Of a stretch of 64,000 bases of DNA, positions 5,490-41,286 are shown in pieces. How positions within the stretch are numbered: position 1 is the stretch's first letter; each line of letters opens with the position of its first letter. The stretch is taken from NCBI GenBank assembly GCA_965240325.2, contig OZ251244.1, forward strand, positions 1,054,001-1,118,000. Direction: 5' to 3'. Made by a program: the position numbers and the translations under genes. This stretch comes from Rebecca billardiae RCC1528. Taxonomy: Eukaryota; Protista; Haptophyta. The notes under the pieces are model-generated. The model was given only the letters and a program-made list of their open reading frames with translations. It was not told the origin of the DNA and did no database searches.

Positions 5490-7712
5490 TCAGAGCAAGT
5501 AGTGCGCACGAGTCGGAGTAGGGCTGCTTGCAGCAGTGGCTGCCTTTGCAGCGCCGGAGCGGTGCGCGTACCCGTAGTAGTGCTGCTTGATGGCCACGGC
5601 CACGGCGCCTAGGGCAACGGCGGCCATGCCGACTCCTGCCAGCATGCCGACCACCGCTCCGCCTGCGTGCGGCTGCGACAGCGCGTGCGACACCGGCAGA
5701 CCGCGAGGAGCTGGCTCGGCGCGCGCCGCAATGAGGGAGGGCTCGAAGAGCTCGGCGGGGAGGCCAGGGGTGAGCCGGCGAAGCAGCGTCTCGGCGCCAT
5801 GCCCGAGTGTCCCCAGGCCGGTGGTCAGGTCGTAGCCGACCGTAGCGTTGTAGCGCACGGCGGGGTTGTAGCACGAGCTGTACGGCCGCGGCTTCGCGGG
5901 GAAGGCCGGCGCGCCGTAATCGCCCCAGCCGTTGTTGCCGACGGTCACGTCATAGAAGGCGGGGGCGGCCGAGCCCGCCGTCTCCGCGTGCGCGCGGTAC
6001 AGCAGCGGGTTGATCCAGCCGAAGCGCTCGCCCGTGAACGCGAGCGAGATCAGGCCGGCCATCACGGGCGATGCGATCGACGTGCCAAACACACAGGTCT
6101 CCGCACCCCCGAAGACGATGGCAAAGTTGGCGCCGACCGCGGCCACGTCCGGATAGGTCCGCGCGCGCGGCGCCGGGCTGCCGAGCTGCCAGGAGAAGTC
6201 GTAGCCGGCGTCGGCCGTGAACACATCGCTGATGCCGCCTCCGCTCGTGATCGTCGCCGGCCCCGCCGCGCCCGGGACGCCGTCCGCCATCGTCGTCGTC
6301 TCGCACTCGCGGCAGCCCAGCCCGGCCTCGAATGTGGTCGCTCCCACGGCCGTCACCCACGGGCACGACGCCGGGAACTCGGGGCGGTACGCGTTGCACG
6401 CGTAGCTGCCGTTCCTCGCGCCCGAGCAGCCGCCGTCGCCGCTCGAGGCGAACGTCGTGATTCCCGCGAGCGCGAGCACGTACAGCTCGTCACAGACCGC
6501 GCGCAGCGCCTCCTTCTGCCCCTCGGTCACGGTGTAGCCCGGGGCGCTGCCGAGCGGCTCGGCGCCGGCGTCGTAGCCCTCGGGCGCGCCGTACGAGATG
6601 GAGAGGAAGTCGGGCGTCGGCCCCGCCGCCTCGTCGCGCTCGACGAGCGTGTGCACGTACTGCACGAGCGCCGTGGTGAAGCCGCTCTGGATCTCGCTCA
6701 GCATGGTGAGGCCTGTGCCAAGGCTCACAAACTCGCCCTCCGCGTGCTGGTTGACCGTGAGCGCTGCCTGCACGTCCAGCGCCGCCTCCTGATCGACATT
6801 GGAAGTGCAGCTGGTGCACAGCCCGCTCGAGACGCCGTCCGCCGTGTACACCGCGGTCACGCGCGCGCTCGTCCGCGCGCCAGTCCGCGCCTGCAGGCAC
6901 AGCAGGTCGGCCGGGTCGAACTGCGCGCCCGACGTGCCCGGCGAGAACTCGACGAGCCCGATGCGCGCGCGCGCAGCCGACGCGTTGAAGGTCGGGTTCA
7001 CGCCGTACGAGTTGGCGAGCGCGCGCCACGTGACGGACTGGTACTGCTCGATGCGCTCGACGACTGCCTCCGCGGTGCACGCCGCCGGCAGGGCGTCCAC
7101 GCCCAGCGGTGGCGGGTGGGTGACGCGCGCCGGCGTGCTCGGCGCCGCGCCGAGCAGCCGCAGGTCAAAGAGCGCGCCCATGCAGTGCGCGTCGGTGGGG
7201 ATGGGCGTGCCCTCGATGGTCTCCGCCGCGAGGTCGACGACCTTTTGGAGCGGCCACGCGTCAAACGCCGCGGTCGACTCGGCGCTCGGCTGGGTGCCGT
7301 TGCACACCATCTGCTTGTTCTTCATGCCGGTGCCGGACGCCTGCGCGGTGGCGCACACGAGCGCAAGCACGTTGGCCTTGGCGGGCGGGCCCTCGAGGAC
7401 GGCGTAGCGCCCGCCGAGCAGGCGCCGGGCCACGGTGAAGCCGATGGCCTCGTACAGCCCGAGCTCGTGCGCGGCGGCCTCCGCCGAGCAGCTCAGCTCG
7501 ATCCGCTCGGCTGCGGCGGACAGGCTGAGGTAGTGACGGCTCGCCGCGACGCGCGCGAGCTCGGCCGCGTCCGTCTGGTGGCGCGCACGGCGGAGCGCGA
7601 GGGTGAACTGCACGCGTGCTGCCCCGCCTGCCGCGGGGTCGGCACCGAGCGCGAGTGCGGGTAGGCTGGCGAGCATCAGCCATGCGGCGGCGCGTGTGCC
7701 ACGCGAGCCCAT
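5490..7712 (-). CDS. Sedolisin/tripeptidyl-peptidase I (S53 family) with signal peptide, prodomain and C-terminal TM helix; copy 1
   Basis: Catalytic E-x3-D (QEAALDVQ), SISYG, oxyanion SSGDGG, FPASCPWVTAVG, SGGG, YPDVAA, nucleophile GTSIASP, Ca-site YDVTVGNN…GYDLTTGLG. Intronless. Confidence 0.93.
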   Translation of the reverse strand: MGSRGTRAAAWLMLASLPALALGADPAAGGAARVQFTLALRRARHQTDAAELARVAASRHYLSLSAAAERIELSCSAEAAAHELGLYEAIGFTVARRLLGGRYAVLEGPPAKANVLALVCATAQASGTGMKNKQMVCNGTQPSAESTAAFDAWPLQKVVDLAAETIEGTPIPTDAHCMGALFDLRLLGAAPSTPARVTHPPPLGVDALPAACTAEAVVERIEQYQSVTWRALANSYGVNPTFNASAARARIGLVEFSPGTSGAQFDPADLLCLQARTGARTSARVTAVYTADGVSSGLCTSCTSNVDQEAALDVQAALTVNQHAEGEFVSLGTGLTMLSEIQSGFTTALVQYVHTLVERDEAAGPTPDFLSISYGAPEGYDAGAEPLGSAPGYTVTEGQKEALRAVCDELYVLALAGITTFASSGDGGCSGARNGSYACNAYRPEFPASCPWVTAVGATTFEAGLGCRECETTTMADGVPGAAGPATITSGGGISDVFTADAGYDFSWQLGSPAPRARTYPDVAAVGANFAIVFGGAETCVFGTSIASPVMAGLISLAFTGERFGWINPLLYRAHAETAGSAAPAFYDVTVGNNGWGDYGAPAFPAKPRPYSSCYNPAVRYNATVGYDLTTGLGTLGHGAETLLRRLTPGLPAELFEPSLIAARAEPAPRGLPVSHALSQPHAGGAVVGMLAGVGMAAVALGAVAVAIKQHYYGYAHRSGAAKAATAASSPTPTRAHYLL

Positions 7713-27185: not shown

Positions 27186-29282
27186 TCACCACAGCCGGGC
27201 GGCGCTACCGCTCGCCGCCGCCGGCGCCGGCGCCGGCGGCCAGCCGAGCCGCCGCCACCCCGCCGCCGCCCCGCCGCCCCAGCCGCCGTCGTCGGAGCGC
27301 TGCTCGGTGGCGGCCGCGCCGCCGGCGCCGCCGCCCCACGCATGGTGGCCGTCTCCGCCAAACCAGCCGCCGCCGCCGCGCTCATCATGGCCCCAGCGCA
27401 ACGCCGCCGACGGCGGCGCGCCGCCGCCACCCTCCGCCCACGCCGCCGCCGCCGAGTCGCGACTCCGGTCGTCCGCGAGCGCGTGCAACCGCGCCGCCTC
27501 CGCCGCGAGCGCGCCGGCGAGGCTGAGGCTCGGCAGCCGCGGGAGCGCGAGCGCGTGCGCGGCCGCGACAGCGGGCGAGAAGCTCGGCGGCGCCTCGCGC
27601 GCGCACGCGGCGTGGAGGCGGTGGGCGCCGGCGCCGTCCGGCCGCCGCGCGCCGTGTCGCCGCCGCGCGCCGCGCGCGCGCGGCGCCGGCGGCAGCGGCG
27701 ACGGCGGCGACAGCGGCGGCCAGCCGTCGCCGTCAGACGCGCGCGCGCGCGGCAGCGGCGGCGGTGACGGCGGCGGCGACGAGGACGACGACGCCGAAGC
27801 GGACGCCGCCGCGGCACGCCGCGTCTCGGCCGGAGCCGCGCCCAGCGCGAGCTTGAGCGCCGCAGTGATCGCCCGCACGGCGCGGTCGTCGTCCGCGCCG
27901 CCGCCGCCGCGTCCGCCACCGCCGTAGCCGCCGCCGCCGCCGCCGCCGCCGCCGCGCCCGCCACCGCCGCGTCCACCGCCGCCGGCACCGGCAGCCGGCG
28001 GCGCGACCGCAGACGCGCGGCCGTCAGCCGCGGCGCCGATCGCGCCCCACGCTGCCCGCGCGCGCGCCAGCGCCGCGCCCTCCGCGGCGGCCGCGCCGGC
28101 GGCGCGCCGCCACGCCAGCGCGCCGCGCCACCGCGCCCACGCGCGCCGCAGCCGCGGCGCGGCGGCGGGCGGCGCGGGGACAGCGGCGGCGGCGGAGCGC
28201 GCCGCGGCGCGGCGGCGCCAGCGGCGCGCGGCCGCCGCCGCCGCCGCGCTCTCCCCGCTCGGGCGGCGGCGCGGCCCCCCGCGCGCCAGCGCGCCGCGCC
28301 ACCGCGCCCACGCGCGCCGCAGCCGCGCGGCGGCGGCGGCGGGCGGCGCGGGCGCGGCGGCGGCGGCGGCGGCGGCGCGCGCCGCGGCGCGGCGGCGCCA
28401 GCGGCGCGCGGCGGCGGCGCGCGCCGCCGCCGGCGCGCTCTCTCCGCGCGGCCCCCCGCGCGCCAGCGCGCCGCGCCAGCGCGCCCACGCGCGGCACAGC
28501 CGCATGGCGGCGGCGGCCGCCGCGGCGGCGTCGGCGTCGGCGCGGCGCGCGGCGCGCGGCGCGAGCCCGCGGCGCCAGCGCGCCCACGCGCGCCGCCGGC
28601 GCGCGGCGGCGGCGGCGTCGGCGCGCGCGCGCGCGCGCGCGGCGCGGCGGCGCCAGCGGCGCGCGGCGAGGCGCGCGCCGGCGCGCCGGTGCGGCCCGCG
28701 CGCCGCCCCGCCCGCGAGCGTCGTCGCCGCCGCCGCCGCCGCCGCCGGCGGCGCGCGCGCGAGCGCGCGCAGCGCGGCGCGCAGCGCGGCCGCGCGGCCG
28801 CGCGCGGCGGCGCGCGCGCCGCGCGCGCCGCGCGCGGCGCGCGCCGCCGCGGCCGCGCGCAGCGCGCGCAGCGCGAGCACGTGGCGCAGCGCGGCGGCCC
28901 ACGCGGCGCGCCGCGCGCCGCGCGCCGCGTCGCGCGCCCACGCGCGCAGCCGCGCCGCGCCGCGCCGCGCCGCGGCGGCGCGCGCGCGCGCGGCGGCGCG
29001 CGCGCGGCGCGCGCGCGCGCCGCGCCGCCAGCGGCGCAGCGCGGCGCGCGCGCCGGCGCGCGCGGCGCGCGCGACGGCGGCGCGCCACGCGGCGAGCGCG
29101 CGCGCGAGCGGGCGGCGCGCGCGGCCCCACGGCGGCCGCGCCGCGCGCGCGCGCGCGCGCCACGCGCCGCGCCGCGCCGCCGCGCGCAGCGCGGCGCGCA
29201 GCGCGGCGGCGCGCGCGGCGGCGCGCGCCGCCGCGCGCGCCGCCGCGCGCGCCGCCGCGCCGCCGAGCCGCGCGAGCGCGCG

Positions 29283-29313
<31 letters not shown>

Positions 29314-30260
29314 AGCGTGCGCACGGCCCACGCGCGCGCGGTGCGCCGCGCCCACGCCGCGAGCGCCACGCCCGCGCGCGCGCGCGCCACCACCGCCGCG
29401 AGGTCGGCGGCGCGCGCCGCGGCCGCGGCCGCGGCCGCCCACGCGCGCAGCGCGCGGCCGCGCGCGCGCGCCGCGCCGCCGCCGCCGCCGCCGCCGCCGC
29501 GGCGCGGCGCGGCGGCGCGCGCGGCGCGGCGCGCGCGCGCCCACGCGCCGCCGCGCGCGAGCGCCCCGCCGAGGCGCGCCGCGCGCCCCAGCCGCGCCGT
29601 GCCGCCGCGCACCGCCGCGTCCGCCGCGGCGGCGCGCAGCGCGCGCAGCGCGCGCGCCGCGCGCGCCGCGTCGCCCGCGGCCGCGGCGCGCGCGGCCGCG
29701 CGCGCGGCCGCGGCCGCGGGCAGCGCGGCGCGCGCAAAGGCGCGCCAGCGCGCGCGCGCGAGCAGCAGCCGCGCGAGCGCGCGCTCGACCCGCCGCGCGT
29801 GCGCCCGCGCCCACCACCGCCGCCCGCCGCGGCGCAGCGCGGCGCGCGCGCGCGCGGCGGCGCGCGCGGCGCGGCGCGCGGCGGCGGCGCCGAGCGCGCG
29901 CAGCGCGCGCGCGGCCGCGCGCCGCCGCCGGTGCGCGCGCGCGCGGCGGCGCGCGCCCCGCGCGGCGGCGGCGCGCGCGGCGCGCTCGGCCCAGCGCGCG
30001 AGCGCGCGCCGCGCCGCCGCCGCCGCGCCGCCGCCGCGCGCCGCCGCCGCCGCCGCCGCGGCGACGCGGCTCGCGGCGGCGCGCGCCGCGCCGCGCCGCG
30101 CCGCGGCCGCGCGCCACGCGCGCAGCGCCGCGGCGGGCGGCAGCGCGCGCGCCGCCGCGAGCTCGGGCGGCGGCGGCGCGGGCAGCAGGCGCGCCATCGT
30201 CTCCGCCGTCGGCCCCCGCGGCGGCGCCGCCGCCGTCGCCGCCGCCATCGTCGCCGCCGT

Positions 30261-30294
<34 letters not shown>

Positions 30295-30860
30295 CATGCT
30301 GGCGAGGGCGGCGGCGGCCGCGCGTCCGCGAGCAGGGCGGCGAGCTGCTGCTGGCGGCGGAGCCACTCGGGCTGGCGGCCGAGCGGCGTGTTGAACGCGG
30401 GCGGCGGCGTGGGCGGCGCGAGCAGCGCGCCGCCGCGCGGCGCGGGCGGCGGCGTGGGCGCGCGCGGCCGCGGCGCGGCGCGCGCGCCCGGCGCCGCGCC
30501 GTCCGCCGTCGCCGCGCGCGCGCCGAGCGCGCGCGCGCGCGCGGGCGAGGGCGTGCGCGAGACGGACTCGGGCGAGGAGCCGATGTCGAAGGCGAACTCG
30601 AGCGGCAGGCTGCCGCCGCCCTCGGCCCCCTCGCCGCCCGGCGACGCGGTCGGCGGCGGCGGCCGAGCGCCGGCGAGCGCGCCGGGCTCGGTGTGAGCGC
30701 GCGGCGCGAGCAGCGTGGCGCGCGCGAGCCGCGTCGCGCGCGCGACGCGGCGCCACGCGCCCCAGCGCAGCGCGAGCCGCCGCTCCGCGCGCTCGCGCGC
30801 GCCGTCCGCCGGCGCGGCGCGGACGGCGTAGGGCGGGCGCAGCGCGGGCCGCGGCGCCAT
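27186..30860 (-). CDS. Ala/Arg-rich protein with periodic L-x-x-W motifs; possible Sfi1-like centrin-binding repeat protein
   Basis: 1224-aa ORF with repeated RALRAW/RALARW/LRRAWARW helical motifs and a non-repetitive LPLEFAFDIGSSPES segment. Low complexity limits the call. Confidence 0.5.
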
Positions 30861-36819: not shown

Positions 36820-38010
36820 TCACGCCGGCTTGGACGCCGCGGCGCGCCAGCTCGCCTCGTCCGGGAAGCCACAGAGCAGGTTCGCCGGCAGCGACGCGTC
36901 GATCTTCTTCGGGTACGGCAGCTTGAGGTTCGTCATGATCTCCTTGAACTGCTCGAGGGTCTTGCCGTCGCCGAGCCGCGGGTTGAGCAGCCGCTCCTCG
37001 CGCACCGACGAGGCCGAGCGCCCCTGGTAGTCGTGCGCGGGGTATACGGCGCACTCGGGCGGCAGCGTGAAGAGCCGGCCGCGCACCGACGCGAAGAGCG
37101 TCTCGGAAGAGCCTTGTTGGAAGTCGGTGCGGCCGCACCCCTTGATCAGCAGCGCGTCGCCGGTGAAGACCATCGAGCGGTCGTCGAGCACGTACGAGAC
37201 GCACCCGTCCGTGTGCCCCGGCGTCGGCAGCACCTCCACCCAGCGCGAGCCGAACGCGATCCGCTCGCCCGCCGTCACGTAGCGGTCGGCCTTGGCGCCG
37301 GCCGCCTGTGAGATCACGGACGTGACGCCGCCGGGCGCCTTCGTCTTGAGCGCGGCGGTGCCGGTGATGTGGTCGGCGTGGCAGTGCGTGTTGAGCGCGG
37401 CGACCAGCTTCAGCCCCTGCCGCCCGTCCGGCGCGACGTAGCTCGCCAGCTCCGCCAGGTCGCGCTCGGCGGTCAGGTCGACCGGGTCGATCAGAATGGC
37501 TTCGCCGCTGCCGCCGTCCGCGAGCAGGTACGTGTACGTGCTCGACTCCTTCTCGAAGAGCTGGCGGAAGACGAGCGGCGCGCGCGGCGGCGAGGCGTGC
37601 GCCGCCACCGCGCCGCGCACCCACTGCTCGCGCTGCGGAGAGTCGTCCGCCACGTCGCCGCCCGCGCGCAGGTGCGCGACGGCGCCGTCCGCGTCGCCGC
37701 CGGCCCGCGCCGCCGCCCACGCGGCGATGACGATGCGCGCGCGGCGGCCCGACTTGCACGCGACGAGCGTGGGGCGCGGCAGCTCGTCCAGCGCGGCGAA
37801 CACCGCGCCGGCGAGCGCGATCGGGTTGTCCTTGAAGTCGGACGCGAGCGGCACCGTCACGGCCTTCACGCCGCCGTCGACGCTCGGCGCGTCCGCCTCC
37901 TTCGCGAGGTAGAGGAAGCCCTTGTGCTGCTTGGCGAGCGCGGCGAGGTCGGCGGAGTCGTACCCCGCGCACGCCATCGAGTGGTCCTTCGGGTCGTACG
38001 AGGCGGGCAT
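36820..38010 (-). CDS. DUF442/Blh-type sulfurtransferase domain fused to an ETHE1-type persulfide dioxygenase
   Basis: N-terminal domain [15 protein letters not shown] (CxxGxR). C-terminal domain [75 protein letters not shown]…PANLLCG. Start at MPASYD; intronless. Confidence 0.92.
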
Positions 38011-38376
38011 CGCGTGCGTGTGCGCGTCGAGAGCGGGTGCGGGCGTGGAGTTGGCGCGAGGCGCTTGGGCGGTGGACGACCGGCTTGGGATGTCGGCTGC
38101 GCCCTCGGCGACTGATGGCGGCCCAAGGCGGCCGGACTTGCGCACATTCACCCCCGTCGCCGGGGAATATGGAAGAATATCCGCGCGATATACGCAGATC
38201 GCCATCTCCGAGCCGAGCGAACTTGGCTCGTCTCGGCTCTCGCGCGCGGCCGGACGCTCACCTGCTTGGAGTCTGGAGAGCTTGCAGCTGGACCGCCGGC
38301 CGACGAGCCGCGCGCGCGAGCGAAGCGCGTCGAAGGGGGAGCGAGCGCACGCACCGCACGCGCGCGGCCAGCGCCG
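38011..38376. promoter_or_regulatory. Probable bidirectional promoter between the Blh-like and YeeE/YedE genes
   Basis: 366 bp separate the divergent ATGs. Inferred from geometry only. Confidence 0.55.
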
Positions 38377-39366
38377 ATGCAGATCGTCGACTTCGCGCCC
38401 TTCCACGCCGCGCTCGGCGGCGCGCTCCTCGGCACGGCCACGATCATGCGCATGTGGCTGCACGGCCAGGTGCTCGGCGTGAGCGGCGTGTGCGGCGGCC
38501 TCGCGCGCGGCAGGCTGCTCGAGCTGCCGCGCTGGTCGTTCACCGCCGGGCTGGTCGCGGCGGGCGTCGGCCTCAAGGCGGTGTACCCCACCGCGCTCGG
38601 CGACGCGTCCGTCGCGCCGTGGCGCGAGGCGCTCGGCGGGCTCGCGGTCGGGCTCGGCGCCGCGCTCGGCAACGGCTGCACGAGCGGCCACGGCATCTCG
38701 GGCAACGCGCGGCTCTCGCCGCGCTCGATGGCGTACACGCTCACGTTCATGGGCGCCGGCTTCGTCACCGCCTCGCTCCTCCACTCCGCCGCCGCCATCA
38801 CCGTGCTCCGCGCGCCCGAGCCGCCGGTCGAGAACGTCGTGCAGCTCGCCGCGCAGCTGCTCGTCGCGCACCTCGCCGCGTACGCGTCCGCGGTGGTGCT
38901 CGCGCGCGCGGGCGTGCTGCCCGCGGCGGCGGCGGCGACGGTGACCGCCTTCCTCGACGGCACGCTCTTCGGCTGCGGCCTCGGCCTCTCGGGCATGACC
39001 TCGCCCGCGCGCGTCGCGCAGTTCCTCGACGTGTCCGCGGGCGAGTGGAACCCGACGCTCGCCTTCGTGATGGCGGGCGCGCTCGGGCTCGTGGCGCCGT
39101 TCATGCTGGGGATGGTGATGCCGCGCACGCTCTCGCGCCCGCTGATCGGCGCCAAGTTCGAGCTGCCGACCAACAAGACCATCGACAGGAAGCTGCTCAC
39201 CGGCGGCCTCCTCTTCGGCGCCGGCTGGGGGATCGGCGGCATGTGCCCGGGGCCGGCGCTCGTCGCGCTCGCCAACCCGAGCAGCGCGCCGTTCGTCTGG
39301 GTCGGCGCCATGGTCGCCGGGATCAAGCTCGCGGACGTGCCCGCCGTCGCCAAGTACTTCGGGTGA
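38377..39366 (+). CDS. YeeE/YedE-family sulfur-compound transporter (fused PmpB/PmpA-like halves)
   Basis: [28 protein letters not shown]…[19 protein letters not shown]…FLD…[35 protein letters not shown]. Confidence 0.92.
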
Positions 39367-39900: not shown

Positions 39901-41286
39901 TCACGTGAACGTGGGCGGCTCGTCGGCGCGCACCTTGAGCATCGCCTCGCGGAACGCGGGCACGTCGCCCATCGCGTCCTTGCCGATCGCGAACAGGCCC
40001 TGCACGCACGAGTACTCCTTGATGATGTCGGCGGCGTCGACCATGAACTTCTCGCCCTTGATGTACGACTTCTTGTCCTTTGCGTTCGAGAGCGTCAGCT
40101 GCGCCGCGCCGGGCACAAAGTCGAGGTTGGACTGCGCCTTGAGGTGCGTGTACGGCACCAGCGACTCGTCCTCGAGGAACGGGACCAGCTTCGACATCGT
40201 GCCGCCGAACGCCTCGAGGACCGCGGTGGGCGCGCTCGTGTCCCACTTGGCCATGCCGCCCGTGTCGCGGATGTACGCGCCGCCCTTGCCCTCGAGCAGC
40301 ATCATCGCGCGGTTGCCCGACGCGACCGACGGGATGCGCTCCATGCCGCACGCCTCGATCAGCGACTTGATGAACGGCGAGACCGCGGCGTCGGTGATGA
40401 GCATGCCCTTCGGGTGGTGCGGCTCGGCCATGTCGAGCTCGCCCGCCGCGTACTCCTCCGACTTGGCGCCCGCCGCCCACGTGCACGGCTCGGTGAGCGG
40501 CCGGTACATCACGCCGGCGACCGGCTTGCCGAGCGGGTCGTTGTAGCCCATCAGCATCGTCACGTACTCACCCTGCGCGGTCGCGAACTCGCGCGTGCCG
40601 TCGATGGGGTCGAGGAAGACGGTGAGGTCCTGGTACGCCTTCTTGTCGATGCGCGTGGACAGCTGGTCGATCTTGATCGTCGCCGCGTCGATCGCCGCGA
40701 CGAACTCGTCGGGCACCTCGAGGTCGTCGACCGTGTAGGGCTTGCTCTTGATCTGCACGTGCGACTCGTCCTCCTCGCCGACGATCTGCGCGAACTTGTC
40801 GCCGGCGAAGAGGTGCTCGATGAACAGGTGCTGCACCACGCCGTCCGCGATCGTGAAGAAGGTCGCGTCCGACTTGAGCTTGGAGACGCCGCCGTGCCTG
40901 TCCTCCGAGATCTTCTCGTAGAACGCCTGCAGCATCGGCGTCACCGCGTCGCACGCGGCCTTGCTGATCTCGCACAGGTCGGTGAGCGGCGTGGAGGAGA
41001 CGCCGTAGTCGGTGGTCGTGATCGCCGTCTTGCTCAGCGTCTCGAGCAGCCCCTGGATGATCGCGTCCTTGCGCATCAGCTCGTTCTTGAGCTTGTGCAC
41101 CTCGTCCGACAGGTCCTCGACCGTGTTCATCGAGACGGCGCTCGACGCGCGCGCGAGCCGGCTCGACGGGCGAGCGAGCGCGCCCGACGCGCGCGAGAGG
41201 CGGGCGACGGACGGCGAGCCGGGCGCGCGGAGCGCCGAGGCGGCCGCCAAGGCCGCCAAGCCGAGCGCAATGATCGCGGCCTTCAT
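39901..41286 (-). CDS. 3'(2'),5'-bisphosphate nucleotidase (BPNT1/CysQ-like; IMPase superfamily), bipartite presequence
   Basis: TIADGVVQ, IVGEE, FLDPIDGTREF, VTMLMG, KWDTSAP…GG. The KWDTxAP motif is typical of the BPNT1 clade. Leader MKAAIIALGLAALAAASAL followed by a Ser/Arg-rich segment. Confidence 0.85.
   Translation of the reverse strand: MKAAIIALGLAALAAASALRAPGSPSVARLSRASGALARPSSRLARASSAVSMNTVEDLSDEVHKLKNELMRKDAIIQGLLETLSKTAITTTDYGVSSTPLTDLCEISKAACDAVTPMLQAFYEKISEDRHGGVSKLKSDATFFTIADGVVQHLFIEHLFAGDKFAQIVGEEDESHVQIKSKPYTVDDLEVPDEFVAAIDAATIKIDQLSTRIDKKAYQDLTVFLDPIDGTREFATAQGEYVTMLMGYNDPLGKPVAGVMYRPLTEPCTWAAGAKSEEYAAGELDMAEPHHPKGMLITDAAVSPFIKSLIEACGMERIPSVASGNRAMMLLEGKGGAYIRDTGGMAKWDTSAPTAVLEAFGGTMSKLVPFLEDESLVPYTHLKAQSNLDFVPGAAQLTLSNAKDKKSYIKGEKFMVDAADIIKEYSCVQGLFAIGKDAMGDVPAFREAMLKVRADEPPTFT

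What the first reader, a model, noticed from the sequence alone, without database searches (positions are those of the whole stretch)
36820..39366. Eukaryotic counterpart of the bacterial blh-YeeE/YedE sulfane-sulfur module
Seen: a CxxGxR DUF442-like domain fused to an ETHE1-type persulfide dioxygenase sits head-to-head (366 bp) with a YeeE/YedE transporter that keeps both Cys motifs (GCTSGH, CPGP). Both genes are intronless, and the dioxygenase has no evident mitochondrial leader. Known: in Xylella and Agrobacterium the BigR-regulated operon couples Blh (DUF442-PDO) to YeeE/YedE-type membrane proteins for sulfur detoxification, whereas animal ETHE1 is a stand-alone mitochondrial enzyme. Inference: a co-regulated thiosulfate/persulfide transport and oxidation system in an algal nucleus, by HGT or convergent clustering. 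This is the best-supported candidate for an undescribed system here.
Basis: partly seen in the sequence, partly recalled or inferred. Interest (0 to 1): 0.85.

Follow-up and report, generated by a model that had tools for sequence, protein, structure and literature searches.

The report
Algal persulfide dioxygenase–sulfur transporter gene pair
A haptophyte-type alga keeps a sulfur-oxidising fusion enzyme and a YeeE-type sulfur membrane channel back to back on one short promoter region, a pairing conserved in five related algal loci that mirrors a bacterial sulfide-detoxification operon; both parts belong to known families.

Summary
Window 36820-38010 (-) encodes a 396-aa protein. Its C-terminal domain is an ETHE1-type (type I) persulfide dioxygenase. 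Its N-terminal 140 aa form a PTP-fold domain with an invariant C-x-S-G-x-R loop. Pfam does not call this domain, but profile-profile comparison ties it to DUF442 (98.5%, E 1.6e-15).

A 329-aa YeeE-fold membrane protein starts 366 bp away on the other strand (38377-39366). It is a single-chain fusion of the bacterial YedE1 and YedE2/DUF6691 subunits joined by an extra linker helix. Both Cys motifs are invariant in 72 algal relatives.

The head-to-head pair recurs in five distinct Pavlovophyceae-type loci, including Diacronema lutheri and Pavlovales sp. CCMP2436, where both genes carry introns. The flanking genes differ. The two genes are unlinked in cryptophyte, pelagophyte, green-algal and Ostreococcus loci.

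Each component is widespread in algae, and nothing points to a recent bacterial transfer. Co-expression could not be tested.

Most likely function: import of sulfane sulfur or thiosulfate, transfer to glutathione, and oxidation to sulfite in the cytosol. This is a new eukaryotic variant of a known bacterial module, of moderate interest.

Another first-stage note (s1-365551) reports a second such fusion elsewhere in this genome.

The parts
36820..38010 (-). CDS (stop included) of the 396-aa fusion protein: a DUF442-like domain followed by an ETHE1-type persulfide dioxygenase. Single exon.
   Evidence: ORF and start codon. Full-length alignment to five homologues at 61-81% identity. 60% identity to the Diacronema orthologue. 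Conserved start with in-frame stops upstream in the orthologues.
37591..38010 (-). N-terminal domain (aa 1-140): PTP/DUSP fold, remote DUF442 homologue, predicted sulfurtransferase.
   Evidence: No Pfam hit. Domain profile hits PF04273-bearing proteins. hhalign 98.5%, E 1.6e-15 over 109 columns. AF2 pLDDT is mostly 75-90 in this domain. VIA Z 9-11.3 to DUSPs and Z 9.9 to DUF442 structure 3gxg.
37741..37758 (-). Active-site loop C85-K-S-G-R-R90. It has six residues (C-X4-R), as in DUF442 and rhodanese, and not the C-X5-R of phosphatases.
   Evidence: C85 and R90 are invariant and S87 nearly so in 15 algal fusions. The loop aligns with the CRSGxR loop of the DUF442 domains. It shares 40% local identity with a Cupriavidus protein annotated as a TIGR01244 family sulfur transferase.
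36853..37575 (-). Persulfide dioxygenase domain (aa 146-386), type I / ETHE1.
   Evidence: 2gcu 4e-77, 4chl 9e-77, BpPRF 5ve4 1e-74. Pfam Lactamase_B. The motifs [23 protein letters not shown] and PAHDY are invariant among five fusions.
38011..38376 (.). 366-bp divergent intergenic region, a presumed bidirectional promoter. It contains an A+T-rich island at about 38164-38205.
   Evidence: Coordinates. The equivalent gaps are 116-326 bp in four other loci. No 8-mer or longer is shared by three of the four regions compared. Promoter function is inferred, not shown.
38377..39366 (+). CDS (stop included) of the 329-aa YeeE-fold membrane protein, a single-chain YedE1-linker-YedE2 fusion. Single exon.
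   Evidence: Pfam DUF6691 at 124 bits and Sulf_transp at 25.3 bits against GA 27. AF2 pLDDT 95.3. VIA Z 18.5-19.5 to StYeeE 6leo/8k1r over about 250 residues, with the next fold at Z 6.6. Family profile hits 8k1r at 3e-9.
38389..38784 (+). YedE1-like half (aa 5-136) with the invariant GCTSGH motif (C101, 38677-38679).
   Evidence: 39-43% identity to bacterial YedE1 proteins. C101 is invariant in 72 relatives.
38827..38907 (+). Linker helix (aa 151-177) joining the two halves. It has no counterpart in the split bacterial gene pairs.
   Evidence: Helix 151-177 in the model. Bacterial alignments cover only aa 5-136 and 188-321. None of the 80 best bacterial loci gave an uninterrupted full-length match: 52 are broken by a stop and 28 are in separate frames or partial.
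38938..39339 (+). YedE2/DUF6691-like half (aa 188-321) with the invariant CPGP motif (C290, 39244-39246).
   Evidence: 42-51% identity to bacterial YedE2/DUF6691 proteins. Pfam DUF6691 covers aa 189-320. C290-P-G-P is invariant.

Best explanation
This is a conserved divergent gene pair in the nucleus of a Pavlovophyceae-type haptophyte. It encodes a two-protein route for handling sulfane sulfur outside the mitochondrion.

Proposed mechanism, step by step:
1. The 329-aa membrane protein is a single-chain version of the bacterial YedE1/YedE2 heterodimer and has the hourglass YeeE fold. It passes a reduced sulfur species across a membrane along its two invariant loop cysteines (C101, C290). The species is zero-valent or polysulfide sulfur, or thiosulfate.
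2. The N-terminal DUF442-like domain of the 396-aa enzyme takes sulfane sulfur onto Cys85 and hands it to glutathione, giving GSSH.
3. The fused ETHE1 domain oxidises GSSH with O2 to sulfite and regenerates GSH.
4. The two genes share a 116-366 bp promoter region and are presumably switched on together.

Shown here: the identity and fold of all three domains, the invariant catalytic motifs, the absence of an N-terminal leader on both proteins, and conservation of the pair in five loci.

Inferred: the substrate, the direction of transport, the membrane concerned, sulfurtransferase activity, co-expression, and the physiological role (detoxification of sulfide or polysulfide, or use of reduced sulfur as a sulfur source).
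For: Domain identities:
- PDO.
- N-domain.
- Transporter.

Conserved head-to-head pairing occurs in the window, Diacronema lutheri (140-bp gap), Pavlovales sp. CCMP2436 (326 bp, genes with introns), L014/L015 (156 bp) and L020 (116 bp). The flanks compared are not shared.

Bacteria link the same three functions. Plasmid loci show ArsR-YedE1-YedE2-TauE-PDO-rhodanese and a divergent PDO. Of the 80 best bacterial YedE1/E2 loci, 31 have a type I PDO within 4 kb, 28 an ArsR, 11 a rhodanese and 7 a DUF442.

Published biochemistry:
- The Blh DUF442 domain transfers sulfane sulfur from thiosulfate to GSH, and this activity is coupled to its dioxygenase (PMC5823870).
- Free DUF442 stimulates PDO several-fold (PMC9163753).
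- YedE1E2 imports zero-valent sulfur and raises GSSH (PMC10812762).
- BigR controls yeeE-yedE-pdo2 (PMC7315123).
- The two cysteines of StYeeE at equivalent loops (C91, C293) are essential (PMC7449682).

Both proteins start at conserved Met residues with in-frame stops upstream in the orthologues.
Against: - There are no expression data for this organism, so co-regulation is only an inference from geometry.
- The pairing is restricted to one algal class. In Guillardia, Pelagophyceae CCMP2097, Chlamydomonas schloesseri, prasinophyte-like contigs and Ostreococcus tauri the genes are not neighbours. The partnership is therefore not obligatory at the level of gene order.
- A short shared promoter can preserve a gene pair without any functional tie.
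- The N-domain is too divergent for Pfam, and its activity is untested.
- The third cysteine of TsuA-type YeeE (C22) has no established equivalent here.
- The membrane that holds the transporter is unknown.
Confidence: 0.55

Rival explanations
1. The pair is kept only because the two genes share a compact bidirectional promoter. They have no substrate-level connection. The enzyme serves endogenous cysteine catabolism, as plant ETHE1 does, and the membrane protein does something unrelated.
For: The linkage is absent outside Pavlovophyceae. The intergenic regions share no motif of 8 bases or more. Both families occur independently in many algae.
Against: The same functional pairing has arisen in bacteria many times: 31 of 80 loci have a PDO nearby. 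The flanks have been reshuffled while the pair stayed together at 60-65% protein identity. That is unexpected for a random pair.
Confidence: 0.2
2. The system works on an internal membrane rather than the cell surface. The transporter would move thiosulfate, sulfite or persulfide between an organelle and the cytosol, and the cytosolic enzyme would clear sulfane sulfur leaking from mitochondrial or plastid sulfur metabolism.
For: The enzyme has no leader. Green-algal homologues of the transporter are 60-120 aa longer, and whether the extra length is N-terminal was not checked. A second DUF442-like-ETHE1 gene with an apparent N-terminal extension exists in a sister sample (P0002), and another first-stage note reports one elsewhere in this genome. 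This hints at compartment-specific paralogues.
Against: The Pavlovophyceae transporters start directly with the first membrane helix and carry no presequence. No localisation data exist.
Confidence: 0.15
3. The N-terminal domain is a phosphatase or a purely regulatory module, not a sulfurtransferase.
For: The best structural matches are dual-specificity phosphatases at Z 10-11.3. Three of 15 family members give weak DSPc hits, best E 0.01.
Against: The loop is C-X4-R, as in DUF442, and not the phosphatase C-X5-R. The profile-profile match to DUF442 domains is 98.5%. The N-terminal position relative to a PDO domain is the same as in Blh, whose DUF442 domain is a proven sulfurtransferase (PMC5823870).
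Confidence: 0.07
4. The pair handles selenium rather than sulfur. Bacterial YedE has been proposed as a selenium transporter, and by my recollection haptophytes need selenium.
For: This rests on recollection only. Two reviews of prokaryotic selenium metabolism came up in the YeeE literature search (PMC9312934, PMC13188914), but they were not read here.
Against: The closest bacterial relatives are the PmpAB/YedE1E2 type found next to PDO, rhodanese and TauE, not next to YedF or selenium genes.
Confidence: 0.03

Closest known systems
Blh (DUF442-ETHE1 bifunctional sulfurtransferase/dioxygenase) of the BigR operon of Xylella and Agrobacterium (PMC5823870)
   Same: The domain order is the same: a Cys-loop sulfurtransferase-type domain at the N-terminus and a persulfide dioxygenase at the C-terminus. 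The C-x-x-G-x-R loop is the same. Both are genetically linked to sulfur membrane proteins.
   Different: This is not an orthologue: NCBIfam Blh scores 85.7 bits against a cut-off of 625. The N-domain is below the Pfam DUF442 threshold. The dioxygenase domain is closest to eukaryotic ETHE1s. No ArsR/BigR regulator is adjacent. The gene is eukaryotic, and its orthologue in a sister species has introns.
YedE1E2 / PmpAB zero-valent sulfur transporter and the yeeE-yedE-pdo2 operon (PMC10812762, PMC7315123)
   Same: Each half is 39-51% identical to YedE1 or to YedE2/DUF6691. The GCTSGH and CPGP motifs are the same. A type I PDO lies next door.
   Different: The bacterial system has two polypeptides of about 140 aa. 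Here the two halves are one 329-aa chain with an added linker helix (aa 151-177). None of the 80 best bacterial loci is fused. Control would come from a eukaryotic bidirectional promoter instead of BigR.
TsuA/YeeE thiosulfate importer (PDB 6leo, 8k1r; PMC7449682)
   Same: The overall fold matches (Z 18.5-19.5 across the whole chain). Both are single chains, and both have loop cysteines at the centre.
   Different: Identity is only 13-15%. NCBIfam TsuA scores 15.5 bits against a cut-off of 400. phmmer finds no match. No YeeD/TusA partner was seen among the neighbouring genes. The third cysteine (C22) has no established equivalent.
Mitochondrial ETHE1 of animals and plants (PDB 4chl, 2gcu)
   Same: The catalytic domain matches both at E about 1e-77, and the metal- and GSSH-binding motifs are intact.
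   Different: Here there is no targeting leader, an extra N-terminal sulfurtransferase-type domain, and a conserved transporter neighbour.
PDO-rhodanese fusions (BpPRF 5ve4, CstB)
   Same: A persulfide dioxygenase is fused to a sulfurtransferase domain.
   Different: In those proteins the partner is a classical rhodanese at the C-terminus. Here it is a PTP-fold DUF442-like domain at the N-terminus.

Membership tests
Type I persulfide dioxygenase (ETHE1) | Metallo-beta-lactamase fold with the HxHxDH, His and Asp metal ligands | tested here: met
   Pfam Lactamase_B at 68.7 bits. THCHADH (207-214), H266 and D285 are invariant in the five fusions aligned.
Type I persulfide dioxygenase (ETHE1) | Close sequence similarity to biochemically characterised ETHE1 enzymes | tested here: met
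   2gcu 4.4e-77, 4chl 8.9e-77, BpPRF 1.3e-74, each over the whole domain.
Type I persulfide dioxygenase (ETHE1) | Substrate-site GCGRTDFQ segment (by my recollection it holds the Arg mutated in human ETHE1 deficiency) | tested here: met
   [10 protein letters not shown] is identical to the human sequence in the alignment. C292-Q299 are invariant.
Type I persulfide dioxygenase (ETHE1) | GSSH-dependent O2 consumption producing sulfite | not testable with these tools
   An enzyme assay is needed.
Blh (NCBIfam NF040641 bifunc_ST_SDO) | Score at or above the curated cut-off | tested here: not met
   85.7 bits against a cut-off of 625. The alignment spans aa 72-381.
Blh (NCBIfam NF040641 bifunc_ST_SDO) | Placement in an operon with an ArsR/BigR repressor | tested here: not met
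   The neighbours are a CysQ-like gene and an ORF without a Pfam hit. No ArsR is adjacent.
DUF442 / BLH_phosphatase (PF04273) | Pfam gathering score | tested here: not met
   No hit at E up to 10 for aa 1-146. Three of 15 family members hit weakly, best E 0.044.
DUF442 / BLH_phosphatase (PF04273) | Homology detectable by profile methods | tested here: met
   The N-domain profile finds PF04273-bearing proteins at 7.6e-10 to 1.3e-6. hhalign gives 98.5%, E 1.6e-15 over 109 columns.
DUF442 / BLH_phosphatase (PF04273) | Six-residue C-x-x-G-x-R active-site loop on a PTP-like fold | tested here: met
   The loop is C85-K-S-G-R-R90, with C85 and R90 invariant. DUSP/PTP fold at Z 9-11.3 and 3gxg (DUF442) at Z 9.9.
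DUF442 / BLH_phosphatase (PF04273) | Sulfurtransferase activity (thiosulfate or polysulfide to GSH or cyanide) | not testable with these tools
   An assay with a C85S control is needed.
YeeE/YedE family (COG2391; PF04143 + PF20398) | Pfam domains above threshold | tested here: inconclusive
   DUF6691 scores 124.1 bits (GA 27), which is met. Sulf_transp scores 25.3 bits (GA 27), just below.
YeeE/YedE family (COG2391; PF04143 + PF20398) | YeeE hourglass fold | tested here: met
   Model pLDDT 95.3. Foldseek probability 1.00 and TM 0.55-0.58 to 6leo/8k1r only. VIA Z 18.5-19.5, with the next fold at 6.6. Profile E 3.3e-9.
YeeE/YedE family (COG2391; PF04143 + PF20398) | Conserved pathway cysteines in the buried loops | tested here: inconclusive
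   Two are invariant, C101 and C290. The GCTSGH motif aligns to the StYeeE motifs near C91 and C293. An equivalent of C22 was not established.
YedE1E2 / PmpAB subtype | Two separate subunits of about 140 aa | tested here: not met
   Here there is one 329-aa chain with a linker helix. All 80 best bacterial loci are split.
YedE1E2 / PmpAB subtype | Sequence similarity to both subunits, and a PDO neighbour | tested here: met
   39-43% identity to YedE1 and 42-51% to YedE2. The PDO is adjacent here, and in 31 of 80 bacterial loci.
TsuA thiosulfate transporter (NCBIfam NF052577) | Score at or above the curated cut-off | tested here: not met
   15.5 bits against a cut-off of 400.

The most novel reading that the evidence does not exclude
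Pavlovophyceae, and possibly many algae that carry both genes unlinked, have a dedicated extra-mitochondrial pathway for reduced inorganic sulfur. A eukaryote-specific single-chain YedE1E2 channel would take up polysulfide, persulfide or thiosulfate. A leaderless DUF442-like-ETHE1 enzyme would convert it to sulfite for assimilation or detoxification. The conserved head-to-head pair would then be a true functional gene cluster in a eukaryotic nucleus, assembled independently of the bacterial operons. It would reveal an unrecognised route of sulfur acquisition in marine phytoplankton.
Probability: 0.3. Interest if true: 0.7.

Novelty: new variant of a known kind. Interest (0 to 1): 0.55.

Why it matters
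Functionally linked gene pairs that stay together in eukaryotic nuclei are, to my knowledge, uncommon. This one reproduces a partnership (sulfur channel, sulfurtransferase, persulfide dioxygenase) that bacteria encode in operons.

The finding also defines a divergent eukaryotic branch of DUF442 that Pfam misses. It shows that the algal YeeE-type proteins are covalent fusions of the bacterial YedE1 and YedE2 subunits.

If the pair is co-regulated and acts on external reduced sulfur, it would point to a non-mitochondrial sulfide or polysulfide handling route in phytoplankton. I found no paper describing such a route in algae. The idea can be tested in culturable species such as Diacronema lutheri.

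Tried and rejected
- **Pfam on the N-domain alone** gave nothing. Profile and fold methods were needed.
- **phmmer of the transporter against PDB sequences** gave only a chance hit. The family profile and the fold search found YeeE.
- **RNA evidence:** no RNA run was listed for this stretch. Co-expression remains untested.
- **Shared promoter motifs:** no k-mer of 8 bases or more is shared by three of the four intergenic regions compared. A TTTCGCGGAAA-like element occurs in L014, with related versions in CCMP2436 and Diacronema, but not clearly in the window.
- **Recent HGT:** not supported. The nearest relatives of both proteins are algal, and CCMP2436 has introns in both genes. The trees are FastTree only and have weak backbones. 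The PDO tree places the Pavlovophyceae clade (support 98) among algal ETHE1s. The YeeE tree does not exclude a single eukaryotic origin. Neither tree identifies a donor.
- **A fused bacterial ancestor of the transporter:** none among the 80 best loci from one genome per bacterial or archaeal species.
- **A wider sulfur gene cluster:** the neighbouring CysQ-like gene is not conserved next to the pair in the other loci.
- **Literature searches** for algal YeeE or for DUF442-ETHE1 fusions in algae returned nothing relevant.
Full report
**What is there**

The window is very G+C-rich, at 60-94% per 2-kb block. First-stage notes on the same window describe copia elements and spliced genes, so it is eukaryotic.

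Two uninterrupted ORFs lie on opposite strands at the reported place. The enzyme gene runs 36820-38010 (-), with its ATG at 38010, and encodes 396 aa. The membrane-protein gene runs 38377-39366 (+) and encodes 329 aa.

**The enzyme**

Residues 146-386 are a type I persulfide dioxygenase.
- phmmer against PDB sequences gives Arabidopsis ETHE1 (2gcu) at 4.4e-77, human ETHE1 (4chl) at 8.9e-77 and the Burkholderia PDO-rhodanese fusion at 1.3e-74.
- The metal-binding and substrate motifs [23 protein letters not shown] and PAHDY are intact and invariant among five full-length homologues.

Residues 1-145 have no Pfam hit, even at E 10. Three lines of evidence nevertheless place them with DUF442:
- A profile of this domain, searched against 1.84 billion representative proteins, found 51 proteins at E up to 0.001. 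Three of the more distant ones (P0126, P0129, P0133) carry PF04273 (BLH_phosphatase, formerly DUF442).
- A 15-sequence alignment of the algal N-domains matches an alignment of DUF442 domains by hhalign at 98.5% probability and E 1.6e-15 over 109 columns. The match includes the Cys loop.
- In the AlphaFold model the domain has pLDDT mostly 75-90. It superposes on dual-specificity phosphatases at Z 10-11.3 and on the DUF442 structure 3gxg at Z 9.9.

The loop C85-K-S-G-R-R90 has the six-residue C-X4-R spacing seen in the DUF442 sequences aligned here (CRSGxR), not the C-X5-R of phosphatases. C85 and R90 are invariant across all 15 algal fusions. 'DUF442-like' is therefore correct, but as a remote and unannotated branch.

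The protein is not a Blh orthologue. The NCBIfam Blh model scores 85.7 bits against a cut-off of 625.

**The membrane protein**

- Pfam gives DUF6691 for residues 189-320 (124 bits) and Sulf_transp just under threshold for residues 79-128 (25.3 bits against 27).
- tblastn against plasmids aligns the single algal chain across two adjacent bacterial genes, annotated 'YeeE/YedE family protein' and 'DUF6691 family protein'.
- By BLASTP, residues 5-136 are 39-43% identical to YedE1 proteins, and residues 188-321 are 42-51% identical to YedE2/DUF6691 proteins.
- Residues 137-187 have no bacterial counterpart. In the high-confidence model (pLDDT 95.3) they contain a long helix, 151-177.
- Among the 80 best loci from a scan of one genome per bacterial and archaeal species, none gave an uninterrupted full-length match. 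In 52 the match is broken by a stop codon, and 28 are in separate frames or partial. The covalent fusion with a linker helix is therefore a eukaryotic feature in this sample.
- The model matches only the YeeE/TsuA structures: Foldseek probability 1.00 and TM 0.55-0.58, and VIA Z 18.5-19.5 over about 250 residues spanning the whole chain. The next fold scores Z 6.6.
- A profile of 72 algal relatives hits the YeeE chains at 3.3e-9.
- G100-C-T-S-G104 and C290-P-G-P are invariant in those 72 sequences.

In Spirochaeta YeeE the cysteines in the corresponding loops (C91, C293) are essential, while C22 is dispensable (PMC7449682). I could not establish an equivalent of C22 here.

**Is the linkage real?**

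The same divergent arrangement is present in five distinct loci:
- this window (366-bp gap);
- Diacronema lutheri JAGTXO010000009 (140-bp gap; enzyme 60% and transporter 65% identical);
- Pavlovales sp. CCMP2436 MU631310 (326-bp gap), where both genes are split into several exons and the public gene model misses the enzyme's first exon;
- two contigs, L014 and L015, from one further taxon (156-bp gap);
- L020 (116-bp gap).

The genes flanking the pair in the window have no counterpart in the flanks of three of the other loci (L001, L012, L014). Diacronema's flanking genes are absent from the window.

Outside this class the genes are not neighbours. This was checked in Guillardia theta, Pelagophyceae sp. 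CCMP2097, Chlamydomonas schloesseri and three prasinophyte-like contigs from the transporter side. It was checked in Ostreococcus tauri from the enzyme side.

The pairing is thus a conserved, lineage-specific feature and not a chance juxtaposition. It is also not universal.

**Starts and targeting**

All orthologues begin at the same aligned Met. In Diacronema, CCMP2436, L014 and L020 an in-frame stop lies upstream with no intervening ATG, for both genes. This supports 'no leader' on the enzyme, and it shows that the transporter begins directly with its first helix.

In the window itself the frame upstream of the enzyme's ATG stays open and contains an ATG at 38205. I regard this as a by-product of the high G+C content, but only 5'-end mapping can exclude it.

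**How common are the parts?**

The N-domain-ETHE1 fusion is not confined to Pavlovophyceae. Proteins of 378-419 aa with the same C-x-[ST]-x-x-R loop ahead of an ETHE1 domain include Ostreococcus tauri (P0283), Nannochloropsis gaditana (P0190) and several metagenomic and transcriptomic groups.

In a FastTree of the dioxygenase domain:
- the Pavlovophyceae fusions form one clade (support 98), which sits among algal ETHE1s;
- the PDOs taken from bacterial YedE modules, and the PDO-rhodanese fusions, lie outside it;
- the backbone is weak, and the starred branches force at least two gains or losses of the fused state.

The fused transporter has relatives in Diacronema, Guillardia, many chlorophytes, Euglena and a pelagophyte. 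The three metagenomic contexts I looked up were eukaryotic. A FastTree with bacterial pairs does not exclude a single eukaryotic origin.

Together with the introns in CCMP2436, this argues against a recent bacterial transfer of the module. 'Convergent clustering' of two resident algal genes is the better description.

**The bacterial parallel**

- On a Sphingobium plasmid the order is ArsR, YedE1, DUF6691, TauE, PDO, rhodanese.
- On a Pseudomonas plasmid a PDO lies upstream on the opposite strand from ArsR-YedE1-YedE2-TauE, with one small ORF in between.
- On a Cupriavidus plasmid a gene annotated as a TIGR01244 family sulfur transferase lies about 3 kb from a YedE pair.
- Of the 80 best bacterial loci, 31 have a type I PDO within 4 kb, 28 an ArsR, 11 a rhodanese, 8 a TauE and 7 a DUF442 protein.

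Published work supports the functional link:
- The Blh DUF442 domain moves sulfane sulfur from thiosulfate to GSH, and this activity is coupled to its dioxygenase (PMC5823870).
- Free DUF442 raises PDO activity several-fold (PMC9163753).
- YedE1E2 takes up zero-valent sulfur and raises cellular GSSH (PMC10812762).
- BigR controls a yeeE-yedE-pdo2 operon in Acinetobacter (PMC7315123).

The paper I read on the Xylella operon mentions a TauE-type transporter but not YeeE/YedE genes.

**Most likely mechanism**

The single-chain YedE1E2 channel delivers reduced sulfur across a membrane. Cys85 of the N-domain picks up sulfane sulfur and passes it to glutathione. The ETHE1 domain oxidises GSSH to sulfite. 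The two genes are driven from the short shared region.

The domain identities, the motifs and the conserved pairing are shown. The substrate, the direction of transport, the membrane, the activities and the co-regulation are inferred. I put 0.55 on this functional coupling.

Rivals:
- retention through a shared promoter without any functional tie (0.2);
- action at an internal membrane rather than the cell surface (0.15);
- a phosphatase or regulatory N-domain (0.07);
- selenium handling (0.03).

**Novelty and limits**

I found no paper on algal YeeE-type proteins or on DUF442-ETHE1 fusions in algae in the held library. One recent paper only notes the presence or absence of ETHE1 in green algae (PMC13315243). 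The families themselves are well known, and the public databases already hold these proteins under generic names.

I therefore class this as a new eukaryotic variant of a known bacterial kind of system.

No RNA run was listed for this stretch, so expression rests only on MMETSP transcripts of orthologues (P0001, P0003).

A first-stage note reports a second Blh-like fusion elsewhere in this genome (s1-365551). A 77%-identical protein with an apparent N-terminal extension comes from a sister sample. I could not show that it belongs to the same organism.

Noticed in passing
window 39901-41286 (-): The gene convergent with the transporter encodes a 461-aa Inositol_P-family protein with a hydrophobic, signal-like N-terminus. 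Its best NCBIfam match is CysQ (3'(2'),5'-bisphosphate nucleotidase) at 66.7 bits, below the cut-off. It is another sulfur-related enzyme, but it is not conserved next to the pair in the other loci.
   Followed up: partly
window 38011-38205: The reading frame upstream of the enzyme's start stays open and holds an in-frame ATG at 38205, 65 codons upstream. The orthologues have stops there, so it is probably untranslated. It would need 5'-end mapping to settle.
   Followed up: partly
window 38164-38205: An A+T-rich island (GGAATATGGAAGAATATCC followed by GCGCGATATACGC) sits in an otherwise 72% G+C intergenic region. It could be a core promoter element.
   Followed up: no
L014 intergenic region (reverse complement of 348-503), L012 5495-5820, L001 7861-8000: A TTTCGCGGAAA-like palindromic element occurs in L014. 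Related versions (TTTCTGCGAAA, TTTCGCAGA) occur in the intergenic regions of CCMP2436 and Diacronema. It is not clearly present in the window.
   Followed up: no
window 28001-30550: About 2.5 kb of more than 90% G+C, dominated by (CGC)n/(GCG)n-type low-complexity sequence. The 28001-30000 block is 94% G+C with AT skew 0.51.
   Followed up: no
L019 218-1498 (protein P0002, sample ERR14847149): A DUF442-like-ETHE1 protein, 77% identical to the window's, comes from a run numbered between the two runs that hold the window's own contig. It has a 33-39 aa Arg-rich N-terminal extension before the conserved domain. Its contig is 62% G+C, so it may be a paralogue or a related species. The called start is not an ATG.
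   Followed up: partly
proteins P0126, P0129, P0133: Proteins with two tandem DUF442 domains are the nearest Pfam-annotated relatives of the algal N-domain found in the 1.84-billion-protein library. Their origin and function are unknown.
   Followed up: no
L012 5821-9554 (Pavlovales sp. CCMP2436, MU631310): The public gene model of the enzyme (324 aa, starting at locus position 6001) misses the first exon, which holds most of the DUF442-like domain. tblastn places the start at 5821.
   Followed up: partly
L020 5380-6654: The transporter homologue loses similarity after about residue 287 and continues in an Arg/Pro-rich frame. This is an intron or an assembly frameshift.
   Followed up: no
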